Shown here one piece after another: positions 46,501-61,500 of a DNA stretch of 64,000 bases (position 1 is the first letter of the stretch; the number at the start of each line of letters is the position of its first letter). The translations under genes were made by a program, and so were the position numbers. The notes under the pieces were generated by a model that saw nothing but the letters and a program-made list of their open reading frames with translations, made no database searches and was not told the DNA's origin. This stretch comes from Phallusia mammillata (lineage: Eukaryota), in contig OZ281494.1 in assembly GCA_965637545.1 (NCBI GenBank), positions 16,740,001-16,804,000 of the forward strand, given 5' to 3'.

Positions 46501-49500
46501 CTGCCAGCCGAACTTACATCAAACTCTTACGATGTTGCGACAATATCTGGGGCTTTAAGTCCTTCACAGGTCGACGTGGATTGCATACCAATAATAATCG
46601 GTGCCGTGAGACCGGGTGGTTACATTGTTCTCACGACCAGACTTAACCCTTCTAATCTGCAGTACGTGGAAAGACTGGAAAGCGAAATGAAAAGATTGGA
46701 ACTCGAAGGCGTTTGGGTTTCCCTATCCAAACGGCGTATTGAGGAGTTTGAACTTGCCACTGACGATTCCGAAAAAGTAAACGATTCAAAATACATACCA
46801 GGAGTGGTATACTGTTTCCAAAAACTGTAAAAGATTGTTTTTACACTTTATTTTGTGATGTCGTACTTAGGTTGGTGTTTTTGTGTTTCACTACCCATTT
46901 CATGAAAGTAAATGTTTTGACATTTTCGCATTTGTTTTATGCGTTTGTTAAAAAAAGATGTGAGGTGCATTAAATGTTGGTTTTGAAGAGTATACGATTT
47001 TGTACCGTATTTTGTGAAATATACACCAAGGTGTTTGACGTTACGATCTCAAATAACCTGTTACAAAAACTTTCAGCTGATAAACTTTAGTTGGTTGATA
47101 TTGTTTCCACAACAAACTACACTCAACAACATCTGTAAAATGTGCAAATCGTTTGGAAAACAACTAACACCCTGTTATTCATTTTTTAACACATATTCCT
47201 ATTATTGACCACTGGTGTCGCTCGGGAGCAAAGGGTGTATTTTTTCTTGCTCTCAGATATCGAACGCTGTTCTTCCTCACGCATGTCTAATTAAATGAAC
47301 ATGGTTGAGGCTGTTTACACAGGAAGTATAACAAGTACCTATACAAGTCTAACAAGGCGTGCATAGCGTTACGACGCCACGCGGAGACTGGACACTTAAA
47401 AGTAATGCGTGTCTTAGGGCAACCAGCTTGTCTACAACGTATAACACACCTAAATTTTGCAGTCAGTCAAGAACCGCATCTTACAACCTAAATTACATTT
47501 AAGGTACATATCAAAACGCTTGTTTAATACTGTTTTTAGCAACCGTGACTATAACATAGGATCAAAATAGGGGTGTGGGTCAGTTTAATCAAACCTTTTT
47601 ATTCAAGTTCGTTTTAATTTTTTCAAAAACTGCGTCTGGTTGACCGCATAAATTTCAGTCGAAAAGCCGCTTTTGTCGTCAAAGTAGCCAATCAGTTGAA
47701 GGCACGTTGAAATAAAGGCAACAGCCAATGTCAGGTTAAAAGGAATTTGTGGTTACTACGTTTACACAACAAGTGTAAATTCCTTGCCTGGATAAACTTT
47801 TGGAGAGGATAAGATTAGCAGAATCCCTGAGGCGAAGTGCGTTAATATTCTGAAACTTGTGTTTATGAAGGTGGATGAAATTTTAGGCTTCAAACTGTTG
47901 TAATCTTAACAATTTGTTGACAATTTTGGTAAAACTATCCAATTGTTTAATATTGATAAGGTGAGTGGCTAAAGTTTTATTGCAAATGTATGTTTACAAT
48001 AAAACAACAATGTATATGTTGCAAATTTCAGTCGTTTTCTTTGCTAGGACTGGTACACAAGTATTTACAAATACAAACTACCGTTCAACTTGTTTATGTT
48101 GTAACGTGAACGAAATGTTTGCAGTATGCTGTACATGATTTCGGATGTGTGTAAAACTTGTACGGCAATGTGAACACGCTGTTGTTTGTGACTCAGTCGT
48201 GTATGACGCGGCGGTTGAGAATTCCAATGCGAGGTTACTACAGTTCGAATTACGTAATTCCAAAACGAGCGCATCCAGTTTGAAATTTGCGCGGGAAACC
48301 TGACTATCTTTTAGGACATTACTTTTGCATTGTGTAGGTATAAAACGTGTTGTGTGTGCAAATTTAGTGGATAAACCGTACTAATGGTTTTAAGTTTTCG
48401 TAATAAATTTCTGCCCTTAAACAATTGTGAAGGAATATTGGTCACTGATTGGGGTTTCTGGTATTCACATGTTATATATTTGTGGTCAAAATTTACAGTT
48501 CAGAAAAATTGTAAAAACAAATCGTTTTTGTCACAAAAAAAAACACAAACTCGTGTAAACCTTCGCCGGGTTCGCCCCCAATCATTTATTTCTGCTTCAA
48601 TTGTTTGTCCATGGCCCACTGTTTGGATACGACTAAATTAGGGAAAAATCGTATGCTTTTTTTGCTCCTGTATCCCCATTAACTGGTTTACCGGAAGTCA
48701 GTGTTGTGCTGATTTAATGATGTATGACTCAAAACAGGCCACGTTGCGCGATAAATAATTCAGGCACGAGCTTGCTAATGTCGGAATCTGCATTGATCGA
48801 AACATTTTGGGTCTTCCTGTGTTACGTTACGCCCGATTATATCGTAAAGACAGCCCTATAGGTGTAATAAGGTTAGCTTGGACGCGGCCTGTAGGTCAAC
48901 CCTTACGTACCAAGCTTTTGACATATCACTCATACCAAACTTACATACTACCTCTTGAATTTTACCTGTTTTCAAATTTACATTTTTATTTTACTGCAGA
49001 GGCAAAAAGTTGAAAGAGACGATAGCAGCCGTTGCTCAACTCGATACAAGCATGACCGACCTTCGCGATTGGCTCAAGTTGATTGAGGGCAACTTGTCGG
49101 AACCGGTTGTTCATCAAAACTGTTCAGACGACGATGTGAGATCGAGGCTAAAAGAGCAAAAGGTAATTGCTTTTTGCTGTCTAGCTGTGTAAGCGGGTGT
49201 GAGGATTAACTGGTAAATAGGTAGGATAAAAAGCTAACTGAAATCATGTTAGGCTTATCCGATGTGACAACAACTCAAACTGTTTGGGCAGTTCAGTAAG
49301 ATATGCGATTAGCAACTTTTCCAGTTAACAGACGTTGATGCAAAACGGATGTACACTCGAACAAAAAAACGGATTATAACTTTCAGTTGTTATCTTTCAT
49401 ATATAATAGGCTACTTTTTGTCCCAAATAATGTATGTTTTATTTAGGGTTTAGCACAGTTAGACTGTAACTTATCTGTTTAGTTGCATTCTAAACAGCAA

Positions 49501-52500
49501 ATGTTTCAATTGGTTGCATGCATTCGCACTTGACATGTTTAGTTTTGAGCCAAGAGCGGACGAACAAAAAGAAAAAGCTGACAGTTATCGACTGCCTGCT
49601 GTTGCGCGATAAGCAAGATAAAACTGCTTTTGGCGCGAGGCGTTCGTTGCTGGAGTGATGGTGCGAGAAAAAGGCGCCAGTCTCTATAGCGGACAGCACA
49701 TGAGAAGACGCCGATGCCGGCAGTCGTGTTTTATAATGTTGTAAACCGCAGTTATATTTATTTTGTCTAAAGATTCAGATACAGAGTTACAGATAGTTTA
49801 GACTCGAGTTACATCTTTGACTTAAGTATAGCTTACAGGTATAGCAAGGCTCATTTTTATGTTGTATTGATCGCCAGTCTGTTACTGCTTTCGCTTGTTT
49901 AAATTTGGTATTGCGGCTAGATTATCGCTGTACATAACCCGGCTAAGGTCGGCACATGTACCTTGTGATACAGCTTTGAAGGTCGCCACTGTGTACAAAG
50001 TCTCAACAAGTTAGAACTCGTTCCTTTTTGTGTTAATCATATCGCTTTTCGTTTTTAGTTAAGTTACACTAAGGCGCTTTTGCGCTATAACAAAACACGC
50101 TAAACAAAGCGAATTAAGCCAAATTGTGGTTATTATTCTGTCTGGTAACGAAATGTAAGTCTTAATTAGAGCACTGTGCAAACATGTAACCCTTGCTGAC
50201 CAAGCCTATGCTTACAGTAAAGTTATATTTCGAGTTTATATTTGTCACGATCCTCATTGAATGTTTGAAATCGTTTAGGCTTGGCGCACGGGCACGACTA
50301 ATGATTGCAACGATCAACTCGACCACTGGCCGTTCTGTGTTATTTTAAACGTGAAACTGCGCGCCCTAACACGCTCTGTTGGGTACAGGTCGGTGTGTTG
50401 CAAAGCACAACACCAAGTTGTTGGTCTCTCATTTAAAGGCGCTGTAAAAAGTGAAGTAGGAAAACCTTGTTTGTTGCCACGTTACATGGCTTGCCTTTAG
50501 TTGCTGCGACAGCTTGGACCTGGACATAACGTTAGTAGTTTATACGCCGCAATTTTCCTTCTTTCTCAAATATCGTTTATGCTCAAGGAATTTTGTTTTG
50601 GTCAAACAGCGGGGTGTGGTGTAGAGTTGCGCTTCCAAAAACTGCCCAGTAGCTTTCGACTTCTTGGCTGCGTTGTTGTTTTGCAGACCTAATTACCAAG
50701 CACTTGATATCTGGCCTGCGCAACGCCAGTGATGGCCTGTGATTTAATCCCTTGAGAGACACGCGCGTTTTGCTCCATGTCTTAACTGGGGTCCGATGGG
50801 AAACCAAACAGGCGCTCTATCCACTGTGTGATTTTGTTAGGCCCTTCAAGCACTTATAGTGTTTGTTTATTAATTAAATTCCAGTCTGACCCGCAATGGT
50901 AGCTCCTATGGTTTGGTTCGATACAATTTTAACACCCTGCAGCTGCCTATGTAGCGAATGCATATTGTTTGACCTATCACTGATAAGCGAATCGCGCATA
51001 TATGTAATCTGAACTATATCCCACCCTAATGTTAACTCTGTGATCACTGGTAATTTCCAAGCTGATCATTATACCATTTATCACTAGTGGTTAAAACTTT
51101 TTGTCAAAAAATCGAGTGTCATATATAGGTTGAGACATTTAATTATATGGTCCCTTGAGAGATGTAAGTCACTGTAGTGAAGCAGTTCGTGCATTTGTAA
51201 CCACCATGGGACTTGTATATCGGTTTGTAAGTGGGATAGGGCTGACCCAAAATTTACACTGCTTTATGTCGTGTTTGCTAACCCGTCATTGTGCTGCATT
51301 ATAACAGTGCTGAAATATGACTGCATGTCAACTGATTTTGCAAACACCACTCAAAATGTGCTATTTCAAACAACGAACGCTTCAAGGCCTAATCATACAT
51401 TTCGGTCGCATGTCATCGATTAGCAGTCAGTGGGTCGTGGTTGCAAAATGAGGTTTACAAGAACACGAAATCACGTTGGTCATAACTAGTTGAGCGCGCG
51501 TATACTTTGCATTGCACAGTCATCAACCACGTGACATTACGATCAGCCCATCGCTGAACAAGCAGTCAAATCACGCTTGGTCTTTTAAACAGCATAACGA
51601 CATCGACTTCCGTTCATATTAACTCTATTGTATAGGAAGCTCTATCTGGTTTAGGTGCAGGTTTCGTATGTGTGCGCTGTTAGATGTTATTTGTCTTTTG
51701 TTTCCTCAGTCAAATTGACGATTGCCTTTCGGTTTCTAGCATCATGTTAATAACGACTAAGTCTTTGCGAATTTGAACTACGTGTCTTCATGTGTGTCCA
51801 AATAGAATCAACACCTTAGTCCCAGTTTGTGGAAAGAGACTTTTAACCACGCAAATCCAGGCACTGCGCACACTTCAGCTGCAGCCGCATATTTCCTTTG
51901 AAAATCCGCACTTGTGGCCTTGAGTGCTTCGAAGGAAAGAAAGGATATTGCCTTGGCTCTTGATAGCCTTGAGCTATCGCCAAAAGAATGCGACTGTTTT
52001 CACGCCACTTTCTCGCTTTAACGTAGCTTTATCACAGACATAAATCAGGCGGCAAGGAGGTTTAGATTTTAGGTCGCAGTTACTCTGCAAATGCGTCGGG
52101 TACGTCATTTCCGTTATGTGATGCATGGATGCGTCGAGACAGACAGCGAGGTTTTGTTTATGTAGTAGTAATGGGACAAGGCACAGTGCAGCACAAGTTT
52201 TGTCCCACCATTTAAGTGAAAAAAATGTTATTGCGCATGGTTTGCAATACGCATTTCTTTTTACCACGTTTGTGTTAGTAGCATCAGTTGGTCATTGTTA
52301 GGTTTGTGGTAAGTGCTAGCTTTAGGTCTACGCAGCATCAAGTAGCAATAGATGAACATTTGAGTGTTTAAGGTTGCCGTGAGTAGTTAAATTAATTGCC
52401 TAACATTAAAGATACTAGAACCAACACTAATAAGTTGTAAATGTGCTTTTATGCATAGCCAGACAGTGTTGCTTAATACAATCATAATAGCCATGTTTAG

Positions 52501-55500
52501 TCCTGAATATTTCGCCAAACAGTCAGCATACGTTGAATCGCTGCACAATGCTCTTGAAGTTGCATTGAACGGCTCGTGCGAGCTTGCCAACGAACCCAAC
52601 GCAAGACTGAAGATATGCAATGATTGTCAAAAACCTCAACTGTTCTACTCCGAATCGGCGCCAAATTCACCTTGTGCAATCAAGCGTCACCTCGATTTCG
52701 ACGAGCCTAAAGTGTCGACCGAGTCACCGGAGCGTGACAAAGGCACTTACGTCACGGCAGTTATGAACACTTTGATCAATACCCGCTCTCCGAACTCGAG
52801 TTACAACGAGAGTTTGTTGAATGAGTCGTCGAGATCAGATCGACAGGAATCGCCTATTTCGCACAAACAGTTCTTTCTCCACAGACGGCCGTCTATGCGA
52901 GCGGAAAACTCAAGGTCAAAGGGGTCACCTGCAAAATACTTTAGGCGGAGTTTGCGTTTGCAAAGAAACACAGTGCCTTTGGTTGAAAGCCCTAATTCCT
53001 CTAACAATGCGACTGAAACTCCACAGAGTACGTCAGATCCGGTACAAACAGACGTATTGAGCGGTGTTTCGCCGCTTGTGGATAATATTACACCGTGTAA
53101 TAAAGCCGACGGGCCGGGAAAAATTACAAGAAACAGTACTCTTGTAAAAAGGGATGCTCCAAATGGCAGTAATCCACAAACTAACAGTTCAGGAGTGCGC
53201 AAAGACTGCACCTCAAAACAAGATATTTACTACACTCTATCACCCCTGTTGCTGGACGAGACTGCAGACAAAGTAAAACCGGATTTTGATTCGCTCCATG
53301 CAAAGTCTAAGGACAAAACAGATTTTGTTGACACGCCTTGTGCAAAGCCAATGGAAGGAGTGTGCGAGTACGAAGGCAAAACTGCAGATCCAAGCGAAAG
53401 CGACAGCTGCAGTGAATCGTCATCAAGCGCAACATCAACATCTGGTGGCCGTCCCGAGTATTTTGCGGTGATCAAAAAGGGCGACCCCAAACGGAAACGC
53501 GACAAGAGTCGGGATCGTTCCATGTCGTTTGGTACTTCGTTTGGTCGTCATAGCAACTCGTTTCATAGCACGCATGCGCAAGTTATGTCTGTTCTGGGCG
53601 ACAGGACAAATATACCATCTGACTCTAACCAAGAAAAGCCCATGGAACAAACCAATAAAACCATATCAAGTTCCGTTAAATCAACCAGTATAAACCAGGT
53701 TGCAAATTTACACATCGAAGCAACTAGGAATCTTACTGAGACGCCTACAACCCCGAAATTGCCACCGCCTGAAACTCCAAACATTGGCTACGCATCACAA
53801 ATGACTACACCAGGACACGAGCCTGGCCTTCTTTCATTCTCCAACGTTTTCGAACTGGGTGATGTCAGTGGTTTTGACCTCACTGATTCCTACGTCGAAG
53901 AGACAGATTTCATGAAGGACGGTTACTGTCAGTGTAGTTATTGCAATCGTAACGAAGATATTTTTACCTCAACCCAACTAAAAGACTGGAGCCATGAAGA
54001 TGCGCTACATGAAGCAACTCACTGCAGTCGCCATAAACCAAGAGGGCGTGAGTTCGACACGCCACTTACCCGGGCTGATCTGCAATCCCCTCAGCCTATT
54101 GAAAAAAAGCCATATAAGCGAAGTCCGGAATATCAAGTTATCATGGATTTATTTTGTCAGTGCAGAAAACAAGCTGATATCGACCACGAGGTTGCTTTTA
54201 GGATCCAATAGATATTACATATATTTAGTTTATGTATAGCTAGTTTTGTTTTGTTTAATGAAAATAATAGTATACAAATACAATCTTACAAACCTCCGCG
54301 CGTGAATGCGTAGATACAAGCCTTGATCAATCGCAACCAACCTGACAAGTATTTTAATGTGCTTCTTTTTTTCAGGCTCTTCAGCTGGACATTGAGAAAC
54401 ACAGCACTGGAGTTGCCTCGGTTCTTAATCTTTGCGAAGTTCTCCTACACGACGGAGATGCTTGTGCCACAGAAACTGAACGTCAATCAATAGAGGAAGC
54501 CACGAAGAGTTTGGATAGACGATGGAGAAACATCTGTGCTCTGTCCATGGAACGGAGATTGAAGTAAGTAAATTTGTTGTAGTGTGGTGAAATAAAGCAA
54601 GGAAAATAATGCCAAAAAGCAGTGGCCTCGTCAGTTAATATCGTGTGTATGACAAAAGCAATGTAGGTCCAATGCAAAATAATGTACAAATCAAATACGT
54701 TTGCTTACTGTGCACAGAAAAAATCATAAACATTCGTTTCTGTACATCGTGCTTTTTTATTTACAGGATTGAGGACACACAAAGGTTGTGGCAGAAATTC
54801 CTCTCCGACTTTGCTCGCTTTGGTGAATGGCTTCATGAATGCGAATTGACGTCAGCAAATCCCAATACGTTATGTGTGGCGTACAAAGTCGCAAGAGAAG
54901 AACTTAGGACATTCGAAGTGAGTTTTTCCGTTTTTTGCGTTAAAAAAGTCTATTTTATCTTTGCTAGTCGCTATTTCAAAAAGATTGCGCCTACCAAGGC
55001 TTAATAGCTAACAAACTTTCGACCTTCTAGGCTTTCCAGAGAAAAGTACACGAGGGTTTGACTCAGTTGGAATTGATCAACAAACAATACAGAAGACTGG
55101 CGCGCGAAAATCGAACAGACACAAGCAACAAACTTAAACAACTTGTGAGTCCGAAATTGTCGCAATATTGTTTATTCCAACAGAGTAGCTTGCAATATTC
55201 TTACTTTAACCACCGCAACAATGCCCATATCTTTTAGACTTTTTTCGAAGCAATAAAACTTTAAATTAATCTTGTGTGACTTTTGCAGTTCCATGGATAT
55301 ATCGGTAAGCATCATCACAATGAAAATCACGCGATTTTTAATTATGCCCGGCGCCTCATGCAAACGACAATGTCCTGACATTAATTAATGGATCAGTTTG
55401 ATGTTTTCTTGTATGGCGACATTGCCGTTTATATCGTATTATTTCATATCTTTGAAACTCTTTTCTAACAAGTCTAAACTGTTGTTTATGTAGGTTCACG

Positions 55501-58500
55501 ATGGCAACATGCGCTGGGACGCTCTCTCACGACGAGTAAGTGGTATTCTGCGTCGACTCAAGTACGCCATCGAGCGGAGAGAGAGTTTCGAAGCACAGAG
55601 AGAGGCTCTTTTAGTCTGGCTAACAGAAACTGATTTGCAACTCACCAATCTCGAACACTTCAGTCCGAAGTCTAGCCTAGAGGAAAAAATGTCAAACGTT
55701 AAGGTAAGGATCAAAGACCAAAGTATACATCTTTGCCCTTGTAACTTGAACTTGGAATTTAGTGATACACTGATCGAATAGATATTAATACTATAGCGCA
55801 CTGATTTGGAAACATCTTTGTCCAACATTCATACGCTAATAAATGTACAGCGATAAGCTGGCTTTAGGTAACCTTCTCCCTGAAATCCATAGCTGGCTTT
55901 TTAAATGTAAACATTCGTAAAACCTGTTATGAAATTATGTTAGGTTAAAAAAATATAGTTGCAAGACCCAAATATGCGTTTGATAGGCGCAAGTGCGGTT
56001 TATCCAAGGTCATACCAGGTTACATTCATGTAGTGCTGCTTAGCAACGATTATGTTTGGCGGTTGTTTATTTTCAAACCTAATCGGTTCACCACGCGCAA
56101 GCAATTAGTAATTGCCTATCTCTCTCATCCGTCCCGATTTAAACCGGCCATAACCTCAATAAGATAGCTCGGAGCGCTTCGTTCTATGTCGGAGTTGTAA
56201 TACTTGTAATCACCCCCTACTTGAGTTTCATTAGTGACGCTGTTCGAGGAACGACTGTTATTGTTGTGATTCGTTAAGTGAAATCTGCCTATTCGTAGGT
56301 ATAGTTGAAAGTTGAGTTATGAGATGTAGCTTTTTTTTTAAAAAAGTGGAATTCAGTTAAATTAATTTGTTGAGTAATGGGAAACAAATAGTAGCATTCC
56401 TAAAATAGACGCCTAGCATTTGTGTGCTGGAGAGCCTGTGAAAAAGTCAATTCCTGTTGTGAAAAACGCTGATGACTCTTTCGATGCCTGATGTAGTATG
56501 CAGTCAGTCTGTGTTGTGTCGACAGCAGTTTGTTGTGAATATGTTTATCAGGCTTTTGAAAATCATTTGAGCATGTTTCGGTTTGTTGATTGATTGACAA
56601 GTATGGGGCGCTTCCCGTGGTGAAGTACCATCATACTTGTTTTGACAAGACTCCCGACCAGGCGTAGTGCAGTCGTTCAGTCCTTTTGTGGCTTTATATC
56701 GCCGTGCAGTTTTGTTGCTCTTCCAATACAAACAAATTTAAACAAGCGCTCGTCGTGTTTTGGGCGTTACGCTAACAACACAACACTAGAAGGAACGCAC
56801 AATATGTAGTCATTTGCAAGTGTCTAGCAGTACAGATTATGAAAGAACTGCAGTGCAGTACATAGTAAAGTGAAAGATGCTTAAAAGCTCGTTGGTTGAA
56901 GTTTCAGCTTATCATTTCCTGTTCTCAGATCCGCTGTATCGTATTGCTGCTAGTTTACCGATCATGCATATGTTTGCTAACGGTAAATTTGTGTGTGCTT
57001 TTGCTGCTGTTGTGTGCACGATGCTCCTACAGCATTAAGATTTACAAGCAACAATAACCGTGCTTCCAAAATCAGTGTTGTCTTAGATCCTTTTAACTTT
57101 TAGATTTTACGTGTTTTAAGCAGCTCACCAGCCTTATTTGACAGGTCACTATACAAAATCTCGCTTTGTAGGTCATTTGCTCATTAGCTATCCAGATGTA
57201 GGCATTCTATTATTATCAAGGTTTTATCATTCACTTGCCGAAGTTAAATGGCATCAGCAAAACTTACTGGTTTTCCACGCGTACGGGTGATCGTTTGAGG
57301 TCTACAAAGCAACAAATAACCTCAATTTGGCCTCAACAATAGCGAAAACGGAGCGAACAATGCTTGTTCCATGTTTGTCTCTGTGCTACGTGATTGGCTA
57401 TGTTTACTGAGCACAGGAGCACCATGTGTGTAGATGTACACGACCAATTGCGGCCTTTGTGAGTAGTCTATGGTTCATGCATGTTATCGGGATACAGCAT
57501 TGCTATAAAGGGAGTTCTCGAATGCCTGTGCAATTGTTTCAACAACTTCCGTGTCTAAAAAGTGTTTAAGCGAAAGGTTTCTGGAAAATATCAAATGTAT
57601 TTTGAAAGCCCGTCCGTCAATGGTTGTGGTTTCTTTGTAAAAATCTGGTTTTGCTTTGAACGTATTCGAAACAACATATGCAGTAGAGAGTTTTAGCTTG
57701 CAGTATGTGTTATTTATGTAACCTTACGCTGTATTGCTTAGCATTAAGGGGTTGTCCCCTAATCTGTAGCATCAATGCAGAGTTTTGCAGAAGGCCAAAG
57801 ATTGGCAGTTTACCTTGGTAGCGAACTCATAAGGTAACTCTACAGCCTACAAAAAAGTTTTGAGGGTTCCACGCAATACCGAGAGAGACTGAATTAGAGG
57901 CTGTGGAGCATGATGAGCAGTGGTTACCGTCTCCGGAGATATAACAGCGCCATTGTTTATCTGATAAAACGTCATTGGGCCGTGAACTAAGGGTGGTCGT
58001 GCGCCCTTTTTCCCGAGCCAACACACACCTGAAAGGCAAACACAAGGCCAAATTGGGAATGCTAGCGTTGTGGCAAAATGTGTGCGATCATTAAAACGTA
58101 CGCCAGTGAACGTGTGCCGGTGAGCCGCAATATTTAGCGATCTGATAGATCAAGTACCGTTCGCGCTGTTTCTGCCTAAACCGTTGGTGAACAAACTTCA
58201 GCTTGCGTGTTTGTTATGCTCACTAGAGTGTTGTATAGTGAACTGATGCGTATTGATCGCGGCTATTCAAAATGTGTCCAAGTGGTTTCAGCGTTGTCAC
58301 AGAACAGCTATACGTGGAGTTATTGGAAGTAAAAGTATTGTTTTAACTTCGTTTTGGTATTGGTTCGAATACAAAAGCATTGGTATAAAAAATAGGTTAC
58401 AATCGTTGGACGTGGTTTTAGACAGCAGTTTGGGACAGTAGCTAATAACGTTGTCGTTTCTAGGTTTCATGGCATAGGGTGGTTTACCTGTTAGTATGGA

Positions 58501-61500
58501 AGACAATTTGTCGTGTTGTCAAGTAATTAGGGATGAGGTGCAGCAGCAGCTTACTTTGCTCACGGTGAGAATTTACTCCCTCAATGAAAATCAAAAAATT
58601 GCTAACAAGGTGTTAACCATAGGTGCATTCATCACAAATATGAAACGAAATGTGCAAATATTAAAACATTTCAAAATTATTTCAGTGTTTAGTTATACGG
58701 ATTTTAACCAACTTGTCAGAAAATGTTAGTTTTGTAACACTTGGCTTGCTTTTTCCAGCTCTTTCAGGCAAAAATCGAGGAACGAATTCCATTACTTCGA
58801 GAATTGGACCAAAAAGGTCGCCTGTTGATAGAGAAGAGCGAGGAGCATGACTGTGTGGCGGTTGAAGAAGAACTGGAGGACTTCCACAAGTATTGCTGGG
58901 AGGTCATTTCAAGGTTGGACCGCTACCACAATCGACTTCTACGGTTGATGGTAAGAAAAATGCTTCGTTTCAACGATAAACAGTTATTTTAGGTATCAGT
59001 GAAACAATGCTTTATTAAGTGCCTTTGGTTTGATTTTGGCGTTTAATGTACTACAATCAGTAGAGCCATTATGTGAGAACTATACTGCAAAAACATTTGA
59101 ATTTTCCGCTCTTTTCACAGCACGATACCGAAATGGAAGCTTGCCAACAGTCCCTCTTCGACGATAGCGAGCTTCAAGACTTCTCTTGGTGGACTGCCAA
59201 CTGTATTCTTGACGGCAGTGACGTCAGCAACTCAGAATCGGAGGATAACACAACCCGAGACTTGCTGGCGACCCCCACTGGTGGTTCGTCTAACATGGCA
59301 AAGACAAAAAGAGATAAATGTAACGGCAGGTATGCAATAGTATTTGGTTTTAGATTCTGCGATTTAGAGATAATTGTCACCATATGCACACAAACTCAAA
59401 AATCCTTTGTTAATTTGTAGGACATCACCTCACAGCATTGGGTCATTAGAGTGGGACCATTACGATATCAGCCAATCAGAGATTGATGCTAAACTTGATG
59501 ATGGTGACTTGACAGGGGATGAGTCGATTTCAGGTCAGTTGCAAGTTTTCTTGGACAACTTTTAATAAACGCTAGCGCGATTTTAAAATGTTTACGCTTG
59601 TAGATTTGTCACCTGACATGTATGACGAGGAAAACACCGAACTTGAAAAAATCAACCTGGATTCCGATTCGAAAAAATCGTCACCGGAACCTGTAAGAAA
59701 ATTTGCTGTGCTTTATGTTATGATATAACCTTAAATATATCCTAACACTACAAATGATTTTATCGCTGAGCAAGCCAGCCAACCTTATTTTTACTTTGTC
59801 CGCAGATAACATTAAAAAGCAATTTAGCTGCAACGACCCGATCTAGACCGGAGGACAGCAATGCAGCAGGTAGCAGTACGTCTCAATTACTTTGATTAAA
59901 ATCTGCCTTAGTCGCCAATGAAGACAAAATTATGGTCAAAGTTTAACTGGAAAATGTTTTTGATTTTGTGTAGTTGACTCCGCATCCCCTAAAAGACGAC
60001 GGCAAGAGACCACCAAGCAAGATCAGAAAGAGAAACAGCGCGCCAGGCTTGAGCAAGATCTCGACGCCGTCTTGGCATGGCTGGACGCAACATCTTTCCC
60101 TTCCACCGAGTCTGTGGCTAAAATTGAGACAAAAGTGAAAGAACTCAAGGTAAAAACGCAGGAAAACAACAGTCTGAAGCGTTTGTAAAAGTTAAAGAAA
60201 AAAAATCTTCTAAATAATATTAATGTGTAGCCTATATGCTGAGGAATCACTTATGAGAATCACAGATTTACGGACGTATTTGTCACTTTTATAAATTTTC
60301 TACATTTACTTTCAACGTTTAGGCATAATTAAAAACACATGTATTTCAGACTTTGCAAAAGGAAATCGAAGCTCGAAAGCCCATCGTTCTCTCCATTAAT
60401 CTGGTTGCGGCGAGATTAACTGACGATGCCGTCTATGATAAAACTGCTGCTAAATCCAAACTAATGAGAGACGGGTGGAAGGAGTTAAACGCAAATGCAC
60501 ACAAACGGAAAGTGGAGCTTCAAAAAATGTTCGTCCGATGCGAGGTAAGTGTGAAAATTTATTTGGAAATTTTGAATTCTTGCACTGTTGCATATCAAAT
60601 TATTCGCTTTGTGCTTTTCCTAGGATGTGAGCCGATCCGCGAAAAAACTGAGGCATTGGATCGAGGAACAGGAAAAGAAGAGAGAGGAGCTTGCTGCTGT
60701 GTGTAGGTTCCACGATTCCCCTGTGCCTGTTTCTCTTCAGATGCTAAGAAAAGCTCACAAAGCCCTTATCCAACTTCGCGTCGAAACTTTAGAGGAACGC
60801 GTAAAGGTAAACAGAAAGCATTGTGTAAGTACACCCAAATCGACAAAAACAAGTATTTTGAGGTGTTTTGATACCAAATGACTATTTGATTGCAATCTCT
60901 TGCGCATGTTTTTATATGGCATTTTGTATCAATGTTCTTGTTCAGATTGCATCCCTTCAAGAGATCTCCAATCAACTTTTTTTCGCCGATGGACGATATC
61001 GTACTCCACAGTCGCCGCCGGTAGAGGGAGCAGCGGAGACCTCGGATCGTTTGGACGACATCGCCGACCGCCTAAAATCGCTTTTAGACCGTGTTGGCGA
61101 AGATATACGAGTGGCTGAAACAGCACTCAAGGAGGAGAGAGGGAGAATGGTAAGTAGAAAAAGGCACTACAACTCCTGAGAGGAAGGCCGGCTGCGGTTG
61201 GATTTACCGCGCCCGCGAAAATCGCCAAAGGGAACAAAAAACGTATCGATTTCGACTGCGTTTACGTTTCAATCAGCTTTTGTTGCATGGATTCACTTTA
61301 TCCCTGCGTCAGTTAGCTGGTCTAAGCATTTCTGTAGAAGTTTTAGATCTTTAGCTTTATCTAGCATAAGCGATGTTTTATGTATGAAAGCCTAAGCTTT
61401 GCATTCACTGAAGCGGAAAGATTTGGTCCGGTGCTTAGAAACTTCTTTTGTGTAATGTCGCATGTGCACAAAACCGTTAAATCTGAATAATTCGCTGACG

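What the first reader, a model, noticed from the sequence alone, without database searches (positions are those of the whole stretch)
52309..54375. A 566-codon giant exon that would give a short KASH nesprin a new disordered N-terminus
A strong orphan donor (TG|GTAAGT, 52308/9) and acceptors at 52418/52462 precede gccATG at 52493. The ORF runs 1.7 kb and offers a phase-0 donor at 54190, 185 bp before the phase-0 nesprin exon at 54376 (...RKQADIDHE|ALQLDIEKH...). There is no canonical AATAAA between its stop and that exon. The peptide has about 19 S/T-P sites, KRHLDF (RxL-like), RRSLRL, KRKRDK and Cys/His clusters (CNDC, CQCSYC, HCSRH, CQC), with no known domain. The predicted product is a novel LINC component: about 570 aa of disordered region plus about 900 aa of spectrin repeats, LEWD and KASH. 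If unspliced it is an orphan nested 572-aa protein.
Basis: partly seen in the sequence, partly recalled or inferred. Interest (0 to 1): 0.8.

Follow-up and report, generated by a model that had tools for sequence, protein, structure and literature searches.

The report
Long alternative first exon of nesprin
A 1.7-kb exon inside the nesprin gene of a sea squirt (Phallusia mammillata) is spliced onto the gene's last 16 exons, giving a short nuclear-envelope anchor protein with a long, mostly disordered head. The form is real and shared among sea squirts, but its sequence is already in public protein databases and nobody has studied its function.

Summary
The ORF at 52451-54211 is the longest in the window by far, with a chance probability of about 1e-14.

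RNA contigs from four runs of four studies all join 54190 to 54376 (GT..AG, phase 0) and leave no depth in that intron. This refutes an independent nested gene.

One contig carries the 16-nt ascidian spliced leader directly in front of 52459. The first AUG is then 52493 (MFSPEYF), the start shared by three species.

A 17-exon GT-AG model gives 1494 aa:
- 566 unique residues;
- 928 aa orthologous to vertebrate nesprin-1-alpha-type isoforms, with spectrin repeats, LEWD and KASH ending PPPT.

The product is not new to databases. It matches CAB3266757.1 (with KASH) and CAB3266756.1 (without KASH) of Phallusia mammillata, and it has Ciona orthologues XP_018666714.1 and XP_018666715.1. Two further unnamed, probably ascidian, contig sets keep the same exon in the same intron.

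The unique part has no Pfam, PDB or Atlas relative. AlphaFold predicts it mostly disordered, and it carries conserved short motifs. I found no paper on it. The function proposed here, a regulated adaptor head, is inferred.

The parts
49000..49162 (+). Last nesprin exon upstream of the finding. It belongs to the giant isoform and ends in phase 0. It is homologous to the vertebrate exon that follows the unique nesprin-1-alpha2 first exon.
   Evidence: Acceptor ttactgcag| and donor AAG|gtaatt were read. tblastn matches it to L001 3668-3859 (56% identity). Vertebrate VKKLKETLVAVQQLD... aligns here. No contig depth in any of the 4 runs.
50350..52458 (+). Possible outron (the part of the primary transcript removed by trans-splicing). 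The promoter is not located.
Evidence: Low-depth contigs (2-5x against 213-274x on the exon) in run X1 only, and none over 48950-50349. This reading is an inference, because contigs cannot show transcript starts.
52457..52458 (+). AG acceptor used for spliced-leader trans-splicing. The mature exon starts at 52459.
   Evidence: The X3 contig reads GAGTACGGG + ATTCTATTTGAATA + AG (52457-58) + exon. X1 and X3 contigs both end exactly at 52457. The 16-nt Ciona SL is ATTCTATTTGAATAAG (PMC7986045; PMC1488885).
52493..54190 (+). Coding part of the alternative first exon: 566 codons, from MFSPEYF to DIDHE.
   Evidence: ORF. The start is conserved in P0001 and Ciona P0006. An in-frame TAA lies at 52388, and the ATG at 52451 lies upstream of the SL acceptor. 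It is 95.8% identical to P0005 residues 15-580.
52493..52699 (+). Conserved N-terminal module: predicted helix aa 4-26, a hairpin with CxxC (aa 42-45), then [ST]P followed by RHLxF (aa 65-69).
   Evidence: Alignment A2, AF2. pN is 0.21 against a saturated pS of 0.73. The module is present in Phallusia, P0001 and Ciona and was not found in L007.
52883..52906 (+). RRPSMRAE, a conserved basophilic-kinase-type site.
   Evidence: Identical in Phallusia, P0001 and Ciona. The kinase assignment is inference.
53228..53470 (+). Two short motifs kept in all four species: YY(T/S/A)LSP (aa 246-251) and SG..(P)EYF(A/S) (aa 317-325).
   Evidence: Invariant columns of A2. Coordinates.
53822..54190 (+). Conserved C-terminal module: PGLLSFSNVFE.GDV, DF..GYCxCxxCN, DL.SP.P and SPxY....L..QC. 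The last ~22 residues form a helix that runs on into the shared spectrin repeat.
   Evidence: A2. pN is 0.26. AF2 predicts helix 545-565 (pLDDT about 70). The model of P0005:455-870 has one helix from model residues 105-151 across the junction at 126/127.
54191..54375 (+). 185-nt GT..AG intron that joins the unique exon to the shared exons.
   Evidence: The joint 54190->54376 is seen in X1, X3, X9 and X17. Depth in bin 54150-54349 equals only the exon's share of the bin, so there is no retention. A GAG|GT or CAG|GT phase-0 donor sits at the same aligned place in L001 and L007.
54376..61727 (+). 14 shared nesprin exons: 54376-54563, 54767-54917, 55031-55144, 55494-55703, 58759-58950, 59121-59329, 59421-59533 (LEWD), 59604-59692, 59806-59869, 59974-60149, 60350-60544, 60624-60806, 60946-61149 and 61629-61727.
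   Evidence: All introns are GT-AG and the frame is open. The shared part is 99.5% identical to P0005. The joints 54563->54767 and 54917->55031 are seen in contigs. 52% identical to mouse-type nesprin-1 short isoform, including LEWDH(D)YD.
61991..62016 (+). 26-nt microexon kept in the KASH form. The KASH-less deposited form reads on past its donor as far as 62275.
   Evidence: Exact reconstruction of P0005 1277-1340. P0002 matches 61991-62275.
63234..63807 (+). Last exon, with the transmembrane KASH domain ending TDGPPPT and the stop codon.
   Evidence: Pfam PF10541 KASH, E = 3.3e-14. Translation.

Best explanation
The window is part of the nesprin-1/2 (SYNE-like) gene of the ascidian Phallusia mammillata.

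Shown here:
- The 1.7-kb ORF is an alternative first coding exon lying in the 5.2-kb intron between giant-isoform exons 49000-49162 and 54376-54563.
- Its mRNA is capped by the 16-nt spliced leader, trans-spliced at AG 52457-58.
- The exon is cis-spliced from 54190 to 54376 in phase 0.
- Deposited proteins continue through 16 further exons. One form ends in a KASH domain (1494 aa counted from M at 52493). The other ends in a KASH-less tail after the 26-nt microexon.

Inferred:
- Translation starts at the conserved AUG 52493.
- The shared 928 aa act like vertebrate nesprin-1-alpha. KASH binds SUN in the perinuclear space, and the spectrin repeats and LEWD motif face the cytoplasm and recruit kinesin-1.
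- The 566-aa head is a largely disordered, fast-evolving tether. Its conserved short motifs dock and regulate lineage-specific partners. These motifs are an N-terminal helix plus CxxC hairpin, [ST]P-RHLxF, RRPS, YYxLSP, PEYF and GYCxCxxCN.
- The last helix of the head extends the first helix of the shared spectrin repeat.
- An internal promoter upstream of 52458 probably drives the isoform independently of the giant form.
For: - Splice joint 54190->54376 in contigs of 4 runs from 4 studies, with the next two introns also removed and no intron depth.
- Spliced leader on the X3 contig, matching the published Ciona SL.
- The ORF is improbable by chance.
- It is kept in the same intron, with a phase-0 GT donor at the same aligned place, in three other species sets: L001-L006, L007 and Ciona.
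- pN is 0.21-0.26 in the end modules against a saturated pS.
- The full 17-exon model is 95.8% (unique part) and 99.5% (shared part) identical to CAB3266757.1.
- KASH and spectrin Pfam hits.
- Orthology to vertebrate nesprin-1 short isoforms, including LEWD.
- AF2: the head has mean pLDDT 40, and a helix runs continuously across the junction.
- The upstream giant-isoform exon has no contig in any of the 4 runs, while the unique exon does.
Against: - All RNA evidence comes from assembled contigs whose RNA nature is guessed by the tool. It is supported only by their spliced structure.
- The SL is seen on a single contig.
- Contigs cannot show transcript starts, expression level or tissue, so the internal promoter is inferred.
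- The contigs run 2430-2466 nt past 54918, which fits either 3' end. The link between this first exon and KASH therefore rests on the deposited transcript-derived protein and the Ciona prediction.
- No protein-level evidence exists.
- The function of the head is inferred from motifs only. The AF2 alignments are shallow (4 and 12 sequences).
Confidence: 0.88

Rival explanations
1. An independent, intronless gene nested in a nesprin intron. It would make a 572-aa protein ending VAFRIQ, with its own polyadenylation before 54376.
For: The ORF has its own ATG and a stop at 54209-54211. Gene callers on metagenome contigs list it as a stand-alone 636-aa or 268-aa protein.
Against: All four runs splice 54190->54376. 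Depth in the intron is nil beyond the exon's share of the bin. There is no AATAAA or ATTAAA in 54191-54375. Sequence after the GT diverges at once between species, while the GT itself is kept.
Confidence: 0.03
2. An internal cassette exon of the giant nesprin, cis-spliced from 49162, so that the region is an insert rather than an N-terminus.
For: The upstream exon ends in phase 0, and the ORF exon lies between two giant-isoform exons.
Against: Reading in phase 0 from 52459 meets a stop after 5 codons, and the ORF frame has TAA at 52388. The contig 5' end carries the spliced leader. No joint from 49162 and no depth on that exon appear in 4 runs. In L001 a TGA lies 9 nt before the ATG.
Confidence: 0.02
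3. The exon is transcribed and spliced but serves as a long untranslated leader or a non-functional by-product. Translation would start further downstream.
For: No protein-level data. The middle of the ORF evolves almost freely (pN 0.5-0.58), and within-species amino-acid differences are about 8 times those of the shared exons.
Against: A 566-codon frame is kept open in Phallusia, P0001 and Ciona, with a shorter 247-codon version in a fourth species. All share a start, a phase-0 donor and blocks of near-identical residues. pN is well below pS in both end modules. AUG 52493 is the first AUG after the SL and has a purine at -3.
Confidence: 0.05

Closest known systems
Deposited Phallusia mammillata 'nesprin-1' proteins CAB3266757.1 (1508 aa) and CAB3266756.1 (1404 aa)
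   Same: The same gene and the same exon chain. Identity is 95.8% in the unique exon and 99.5% in the shared part. One form has KASH and one does not.
   Different: The deposited proteins start 14 aa earlier, at ATG 52451. That ATG lies upstream of the spliced-leader acceptor and is not conserved in P0001, and the Ciona proteins carry an unrelated 11-aa extension instead. It is most likely an artefact of an un-trans-spliced contig.
Ciona intestinalis XP_018666714.1 (uncharacterized LOC100187257 X1, 1468 aa, KASH) and XP_018666715.1 (nesprin-1 X2, 1272 aa)
   Same: An orthologous architecture: MFSPEYY head, the same motifs, then nesprin repeats with or without KASH.
   Different: About 42% identity overall, and the head is alignable only in blocks. 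These are computational predictions, and I found no publication on them.
Vertebrate nesprin-1-alpha2, a short KASH isoform from an internal promoter
   Same: A unique first exon joined to the last ~930-950 aa of nesprin-1. The shared part is 52% identical over the first 380 aa, including LEWD. It lacks CH domains. Internal promoters are well documented (PMC4924313, PMC3981789, PMC3388047).
   Different: The vertebrate unique part is only 31 aa (PMC4924313), and it joins one exon further upstream, to the homologue of window 49000-49162. There is no detectable sequence relation between the unique parts. Vertebrates have no SL trans-splicing (PMC7986045).
C. elegans ANC-1b and Drosophila Msp300 short isoforms
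   Same: Shorter nesprin-1/2 orthologue isoforms without CH domains, made from internal starts (PMC8139857 and PMC8616381, listed; titles and abstracts only).
   Different: No sequence relation to this head was tested or found. Their unique parts and roles differ.
KASH adaptors with non-spectrin cytoplasmic heads (KASH5, nesprin-4, ZYG-12, UNC-83)
   Same: The working analogy only: a KASH anchor carrying a lineage-specific cytoplasmic region that docks partners (my own knowledge, not tested here).
   Different: These are separate genes with no sequence similarity. Here the head is grafted onto nesprin-1 spectrin repeats.

Membership tests
Nesprin-1/2 (SYNE) KASH proteins | C-terminal KASH domain (a transmembrane helix plus a luminal peptide ending PPPT) | tested here: met
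   PF10541, E = 3.3e-14, on window:63235-63804. The sequence ends TDGPPPT.
Nesprin-1/2 (SYNE) KASH proteins | Spectrin repeats N-terminal to KASH | tested here: met
   PF00435, E = 4e-19, on P0005. AF2 predicts long antiparallel helices with pLDDT 70-92.
Nesprin-1/2 (SYNE) KASH proteins | Orthology of the shared region to vertebrate nesprin-1, including the LEWD kinesin-light-chain motif | tested here: met
   286 hits at E <= 1e-10; the listed named ones are nearly all called nesprin-1 or SYNE1. 52% identity to P0091, with SLEWDHYD aligned to PLEWDHDYD.
Nesprin-1/2 (SYNE) KASH proteins | N-terminal calponin-homology actin-binding domains (giant isoform) | tested here: not met
   Absent from this isoform by construction. 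The product starts at 52493 and has no Pfam domain in its first 566 aa. Short isoforms of the family also lack them (PMC4924313).
Short nesprin isoform with a unique alternative first exon (nesprin-1-alpha2 type) | A unique first coding exon with its own AUG, spliced in frame to the common C-terminal exons | tested here: met
Short nesprin isoform with a unique alternative first exon (nesprin-1-alpha2 type) | Transcription from an internal promoter independent of the giant isoform | tested here: inconclusive
   The upstream giant exon has no contig while the unique exon is covered, and low-depth contigs begin near 50350 in one run. However, contigs cannot show starts, and trans-splicing hides the TSS.
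Short nesprin isoform with a unique alternative first exon (nesprin-1-alpha2 type) | The same join point as vertebrate nesprin-1-alpha2 (positional homology of the first exon) | tested here: not met
   Vertebrate unique sequences precede VKKLKETLVAVQQLD..., which is the homologue of window 49000-49162. The ascidian exon joins the next exon, ELQRDIEKHSTGVAS.
SL trans-spliced ascidian mRNAs | The 16-nt leader ATTCTATTTGAATAAG at the mRNA 5' end, joined at a genomic AG acceptor, with the leader absent from the locus | tested here: met
   The X3 contig's loose end is ...ATTCTATTTGAATA followed by AG at 52457-58. The leader is not in the window. Its sequence follows PMC7986045 and PMC1488885. Seen on one contig only.

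The most novel reading that the evidence does not exclude
The 566-aa head may be an ascidian-specific regulatory and adaptor module that makes a nesprin-1-alpha-like LINC protein answer to the cell cycle. The conserved [ST]P-RHLxF stretch would act as a cyclin-docking plus CDK site, RRPS as a basophilic-kinase site, and the CxxC and CxCxxC clusters as a metal-dependent fold. Together they would couple nuclei or centrosomes to motors in eggs and cleaving embryos. This would be a functional counterpart of ZYG-12 or KASH5, built on a nesprin-1 chassis and created by an SL-trans-spliced internal start.
Probability: 0.1. Interest if true: 0.6.

Novelty: new member of a known kind. Interest (0 to 1): 0.33.

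Why it matters
Nesprin genes are known to make short, CH-less KASH isoforms from internal starts. In vertebrate muscle such an isoform (nesprin-1-alpha2) relocates microtubule-organising activity and kinesin to the nuclear envelope.

Ascidians, the sister group of vertebrates, make a comparable isoform that starts one exon further downstream. It carries a 566-aa lineage-specific head instead of 31 aa, and its 5' end is made by spliced-leader trans-splicing.

If the head recruits specific partners, it would give a tractable system for asking how short nesprins are specialised, since mRNA injection into Phallusia eggs is routine.

The practical points are modest:
- The gene model is already public.
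- The deposited start codon is probably 14 codons too early.
- The unique region defines an unnamed, ascidian-restricted protein module with a handful of testable motifs.

Tried and rejected
- Pfam on the ORF gave only a sub-threshold CbtB hit (E = 0.26), taken as chance.
- ESM Atlas by features: best score 0.76, not informative.
- PDB profile search with A2: no hit at E <= 1.
- The exhaustive HMMER profile search of 1.84 billion representatives found only four clusters. Two are named ascidian proteins and two are unnamed contigs with the same synteny. There is no detectable relative outside these.
- blastn of the upstream intron (49163-52492) against the homologous L001 intron found no conserved non-coding block, so a promoter could not be located by conservation.
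- An HMM of the N-terminal module against all + frames of L007 found nothing, so that species seems to lack the module within 10 kb.
- dN/dS proper could not be computed because pS is saturated (0.72-0.90). Only pN contrasts are reported.
- Literature searches by organism plus nesprin or KASH, and by accession numbers, found no paper on this isoform.
- The contig lengths beyond 54918 (2430 and 2466 nt) were compared with the model. The distance is 2447 nt from 54918 to the KASH-form stop (2448 nt of exon from 55031). For the KASH-less form I reckon by hand about 2136 nt plus UTR. The comparison is ambiguous and I do not use it.
- The tool codes organism names. The species was inferred from protein identity, not from the run records.


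Full report
**1. The observation**

The + strand holds an ORF from 52451 to 54211, 586 aa from the first ATG and 572 aa from gccATG at 52493. The next-longest ORF in the 64-kb window is 228 aa. With the window's stop-trinucleotide frequency of 0.054, 586 open codons have a probability of about 9e-15.

- the GAG|GTTGCT donor at 54190/1;
- the phase-0 acceptor at 54375/6;
- no AATAAA or ATTAAA between them;
- 19 S/T-P sites;
- the KRHLDF, RRSLRL and KRKRDK motifs and the Cys/His clusters.

Pfam finds no domain in the ORF.

**2. Is it spliced to nesprin?**

The run search returned about twenty small contig sets of one organism. Most of them, and all four laid here, hold about 0.7-0.8 of the sampled words, which is roughly the exonic share of the query. 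I laid four of them, from four studies, on 48950-54940.
- All four have a contig that joins 54190 to 54376 (GT..AG).
- Three also show the next joint, 54563->54767, cleanly. The fourth shows it with a 1-nt assembly wobble.
- All four continue from 54917/8 into sequence that lies at 55031/2.
- Depth in the bin 54150-54349 equals only the 41 exonic bases' share (for X1, 53.5 against 274 x 0.205). The 185-nt intron is therefore not retained.
- The introns and the region 48950-50349 are empty, so these runs behave as RNA even though the tool only guesses that.

**3. The 5' end**

The 4527-nt X3 contig begins with 23 letters that do not lie on the window: GAGTACGGG followed by ATTCTATTTGAATA. It then matches from 52457 (AG) onward.

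ATTCTATTTGAATAAG is the 16-nt spliced leader of Ciona intestinalis (PMC7986045; PMC1488885), and it is absent from the window. From memory, the preceding GAGTACGGG looks like the end of a template-switch adaptor, which would make this a true cDNA 5' end.

An X1 contig also ends exactly at 52457. The mature exon therefore starts at 52459 after SL trans-splicing at AG 52457-58.

It would run from donor 52308/9 to acceptor 52418 or 52462. An X1 contig (51883-52335) reads straight through the donor.

Two consequences follow:
- The ATG at 52451 is removed with the outron. The first AUG is 52493 (gccAUGu), the start shared with P0001 and Ciona (MFSP[ED]Y[FY]).
- The exon cannot be an internal exon of the giant isoform through this acceptor. 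Phase-0 reading from 52459 stops after five codons, and the ORF frame has TAA at 52388.

**4. Whose gene, and is it known?**

A word-based search found one relative, P0001 (636 aa, 35% identity, 99% coverage). It lies on metagenome contigs that carry nesprin exons on both sides of it, in the same order as the window.

The exhaustive profile search found four clusters in all. Their cluster members carry names:
- P0002 and P0005 are 'nesprin-1 [Phallusia mammillata]', CAB3266756.1 (1404 aa) and CAB3266757.1 (1508 aa).
- P0003 and P0006 are Ciona intestinalis XP_018666715.1 (nesprin-1 X2, 1272 aa) and XP_018666714.1 (uncharacterized LOC100187257 X1, 1468 aa).

Mapping P0005 on the window gives a 17-exon, all-GT-AG model from 52493 to the stop at 63807.
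- It encodes 1494 aa.
- It is 95.8% identical to P0005 in the unique 566 aa and 99.5% identical in the shared 928 aa.

P0005 and P0006 end in a KASH domain (PF10541, E about 1e-13 to 1e-16). P0002 and P0003 do not. In the window, the KASH-less form reads on past the donor of a 26-nt microexon (61991-62016), as far as 62275.

The deposited Phallusia proteins begin 14 aa too early, at the outron ATG 52451.

I found no paper on this isoform.

**5. Conservation**

A fourth species carries a shorter version. It is L007, a 1.1-Mb ENA contig. Its version is P0004, with about 247 codons up to a CAG|GTAAAC phase-0 donor, followed 1.3 kb later by the ELQRDIEQRETGVAS exon.

In all species the GT donor sits at the same aligned position, and the sequence diverges immediately after it.

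Alignment A2 shows a mosaic of conserved blocks and free sequence.
- N-terminal module (aa 1-101): helix, KIC..C.KPQLF, [ST]P-RHLxF and GTYVTAVMNTL.NTRSPN. It is shared by three species and was not found in L007.
- RRPSMRAE, shared by three species.
- Four motifs shared by all four species: YYxLSP, (P)EYF(A/S), DF..GYCxCxxCN, and SPxY....L..QC just before the junction.

Proportions of differences against L001:

| Region (aa) | pN |
|---|---|
| 1-60 | 0.21 |
| 441-566 | 0.26 |
| 161-240 | 0.58 |
| 331-440 | 0.50 |

pS is 0.72-0.90 everywhere, which is saturated. The ends are therefore constrained, and the middle is kept open but nearly free.

Within the species, the head differs from the deposited allele about eight times more often than the shared part does. 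Run X9 shows a cluster of non-synonymous variants at aa 264-295.

**6. Structure**

AlphaFold2 on A2 gives a mean pLDDT of 40. Its modest-confidence elements are:
- helix 4-26;
- a hairpin at 37-52 with the CxxC in its turn;
- helix 86-96;
- helix 545-565.

A second model covers the head's last 126 aa plus the first shared repeats, with 12 sequences.
- It shows one helix running from head residue 545 across the exon junction into ALQLDIEKHSTGVAS.
- The following spectrin-type helices have pLDDT 70-92.
- The Cys-rich module is not predicted to fold on its own.

The alignments are shallow, so 'disordered' is a supported prediction and not a fact. No PDB or Atlas relative was found.

**7. Comparison with vertebrates**

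The shared 928 aa retrieve hundreds of vertebrate nesprin-1 proteins. Many are 950-990-aa short isoforms.

Their unique N-termini are followed by VKKLKETLVAVQQLD... In human, the unique part is 31 aa and precedes giant exon 131 (PMC4924313). That exon is the homologue of window exon 49000-49162.

The ascidian head joins the next exon instead. The two lineages therefore start a short KASH isoform within one exon of each other, but in different introns and with unrelated unique sequences. This is convergence on the same region of the gene, or an old internal-start zone. It is not positional homology of the first exons.

**8. Mechanism**

Shown: transcription, SL trans-splicing, in-frame splicing, conservation of frame and motifs, and KASH, spectrin and LEWD in the shared part.

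Inferred:
- translation from 52493;
- anchoring of the KASH form in the outer nuclear membrane through SUN;
- kinesin-1 recruitment through LEWD;
- the head as a flexible, phospho-regulated docking region, suggested by its 19 S/T-P sites, the conserved RxLxF next to an [ST]P, and RRPS;
- an internal promoter. The hints are that the upstream giant exon has no contig in any of the four runs, and that low-depth contigs appear only from about 50350 in X1.

In X17 a separate contig starts exactly at 54374 with 4.6 times the depth of the head contig. Exon 54376 therefore also has another, more abundant 5' partner in that sample.

**9. Verdict**

However, it is an already deposited isoform of a well-known kind: a short nesprin made from an internal start.

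What is added here:
- the trans-spliced 5' end and the corrected start codon;
- the four-species motif map;
- the one-exon offset from vertebrate nesprin-1-alpha2;
- the absence of any relative of the head outside the ascidian and ascidian-like sequences found.

Interest is moderate to low unless the head proves to have a specific partner.

**Limits**

- The reads tool allowed a single call, and on contigs only.
- Tissue and stage of the runs are coded and unknown to me.

Noticed in passing
window 52451-52492: The deposited Phallusia proteins (CAB3266756.1 and CAB3266757.1) start at ATG 52451 (MHSQTVLLNTIIIA...). That ATG lies upstream of the spliced-leader acceptor at 52458/9. Ciona XP_018666714.1 likewise has 11 non-conserved residues before MFSPEYY. 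These annotated starts are probably too early.
   Followed up: partly
window 54374-54918 (run X17): In X17 a 2868-nt contig begins exactly at the acceptor of exon 54376, with depth 63 against 13.7 for the unique-exon contig. This suggests another, more abundant 5' partner in that sample, either the giant isoform or a second trans-splice. The upstream giant exon 49000-49162 had no contig in any run.
   Followed up: no
window 53282-53395: Run X9 shows ten variants within 114 nt of the unique exon (codons 264-301). Six of them are non-synonymous, all in codons 264-295. Overall the unique exon differs from the deposited allele at 4.2% of residues, against 0.5% for the shared exons.
   Followed up: partly
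window 54122-54190, and vertebrate proteins P0091, P0008 and P0025 (N-termini): Vertebrate nesprin-1-alpha2-type unique peptides end ...DLP(D/E)C(D/H/N)CDV(S/T)R just before their junction. The ascidian head ends ...DLFCQC... just before its junction. Both are a short D-L-x-C-x-C stretch. This may be coincidence.
   Followed up: no
window 61991-62275 and 63234-63807: The 26-nt microexon 61991-62016 is present in the KASH form. The deposited KASH-less form reads through its donor as far as 62275.
   Followed up: partly
window 59604-59692 and 59806-59869: Two small shared exons are present in the deposited Phallusia proteins, but tblastn with the L001 relative did not pick them up. They are either fast-evolving or lineage-specific exons between LEWD and the last spectrin repeats.
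   Followed up: no
L007 10001-10741: The most distant species has only a ~247-codon version of the unique exon. It lacks the MFSPEYF, CxxC, RHLxF and RRPS part and keeps YYALSP, PEYF, GYCHCSFCN and the pre-junction helix. The organism is not identified.
   Followed up: partly
window 50350-52335 (run X1): Low-depth unspliced contigs cover about 2 kb upstream of the trans-splice acceptor but not 48950-50349. This would fit an outron that starts near 50.35-50.6 kb.
   Followed up: no
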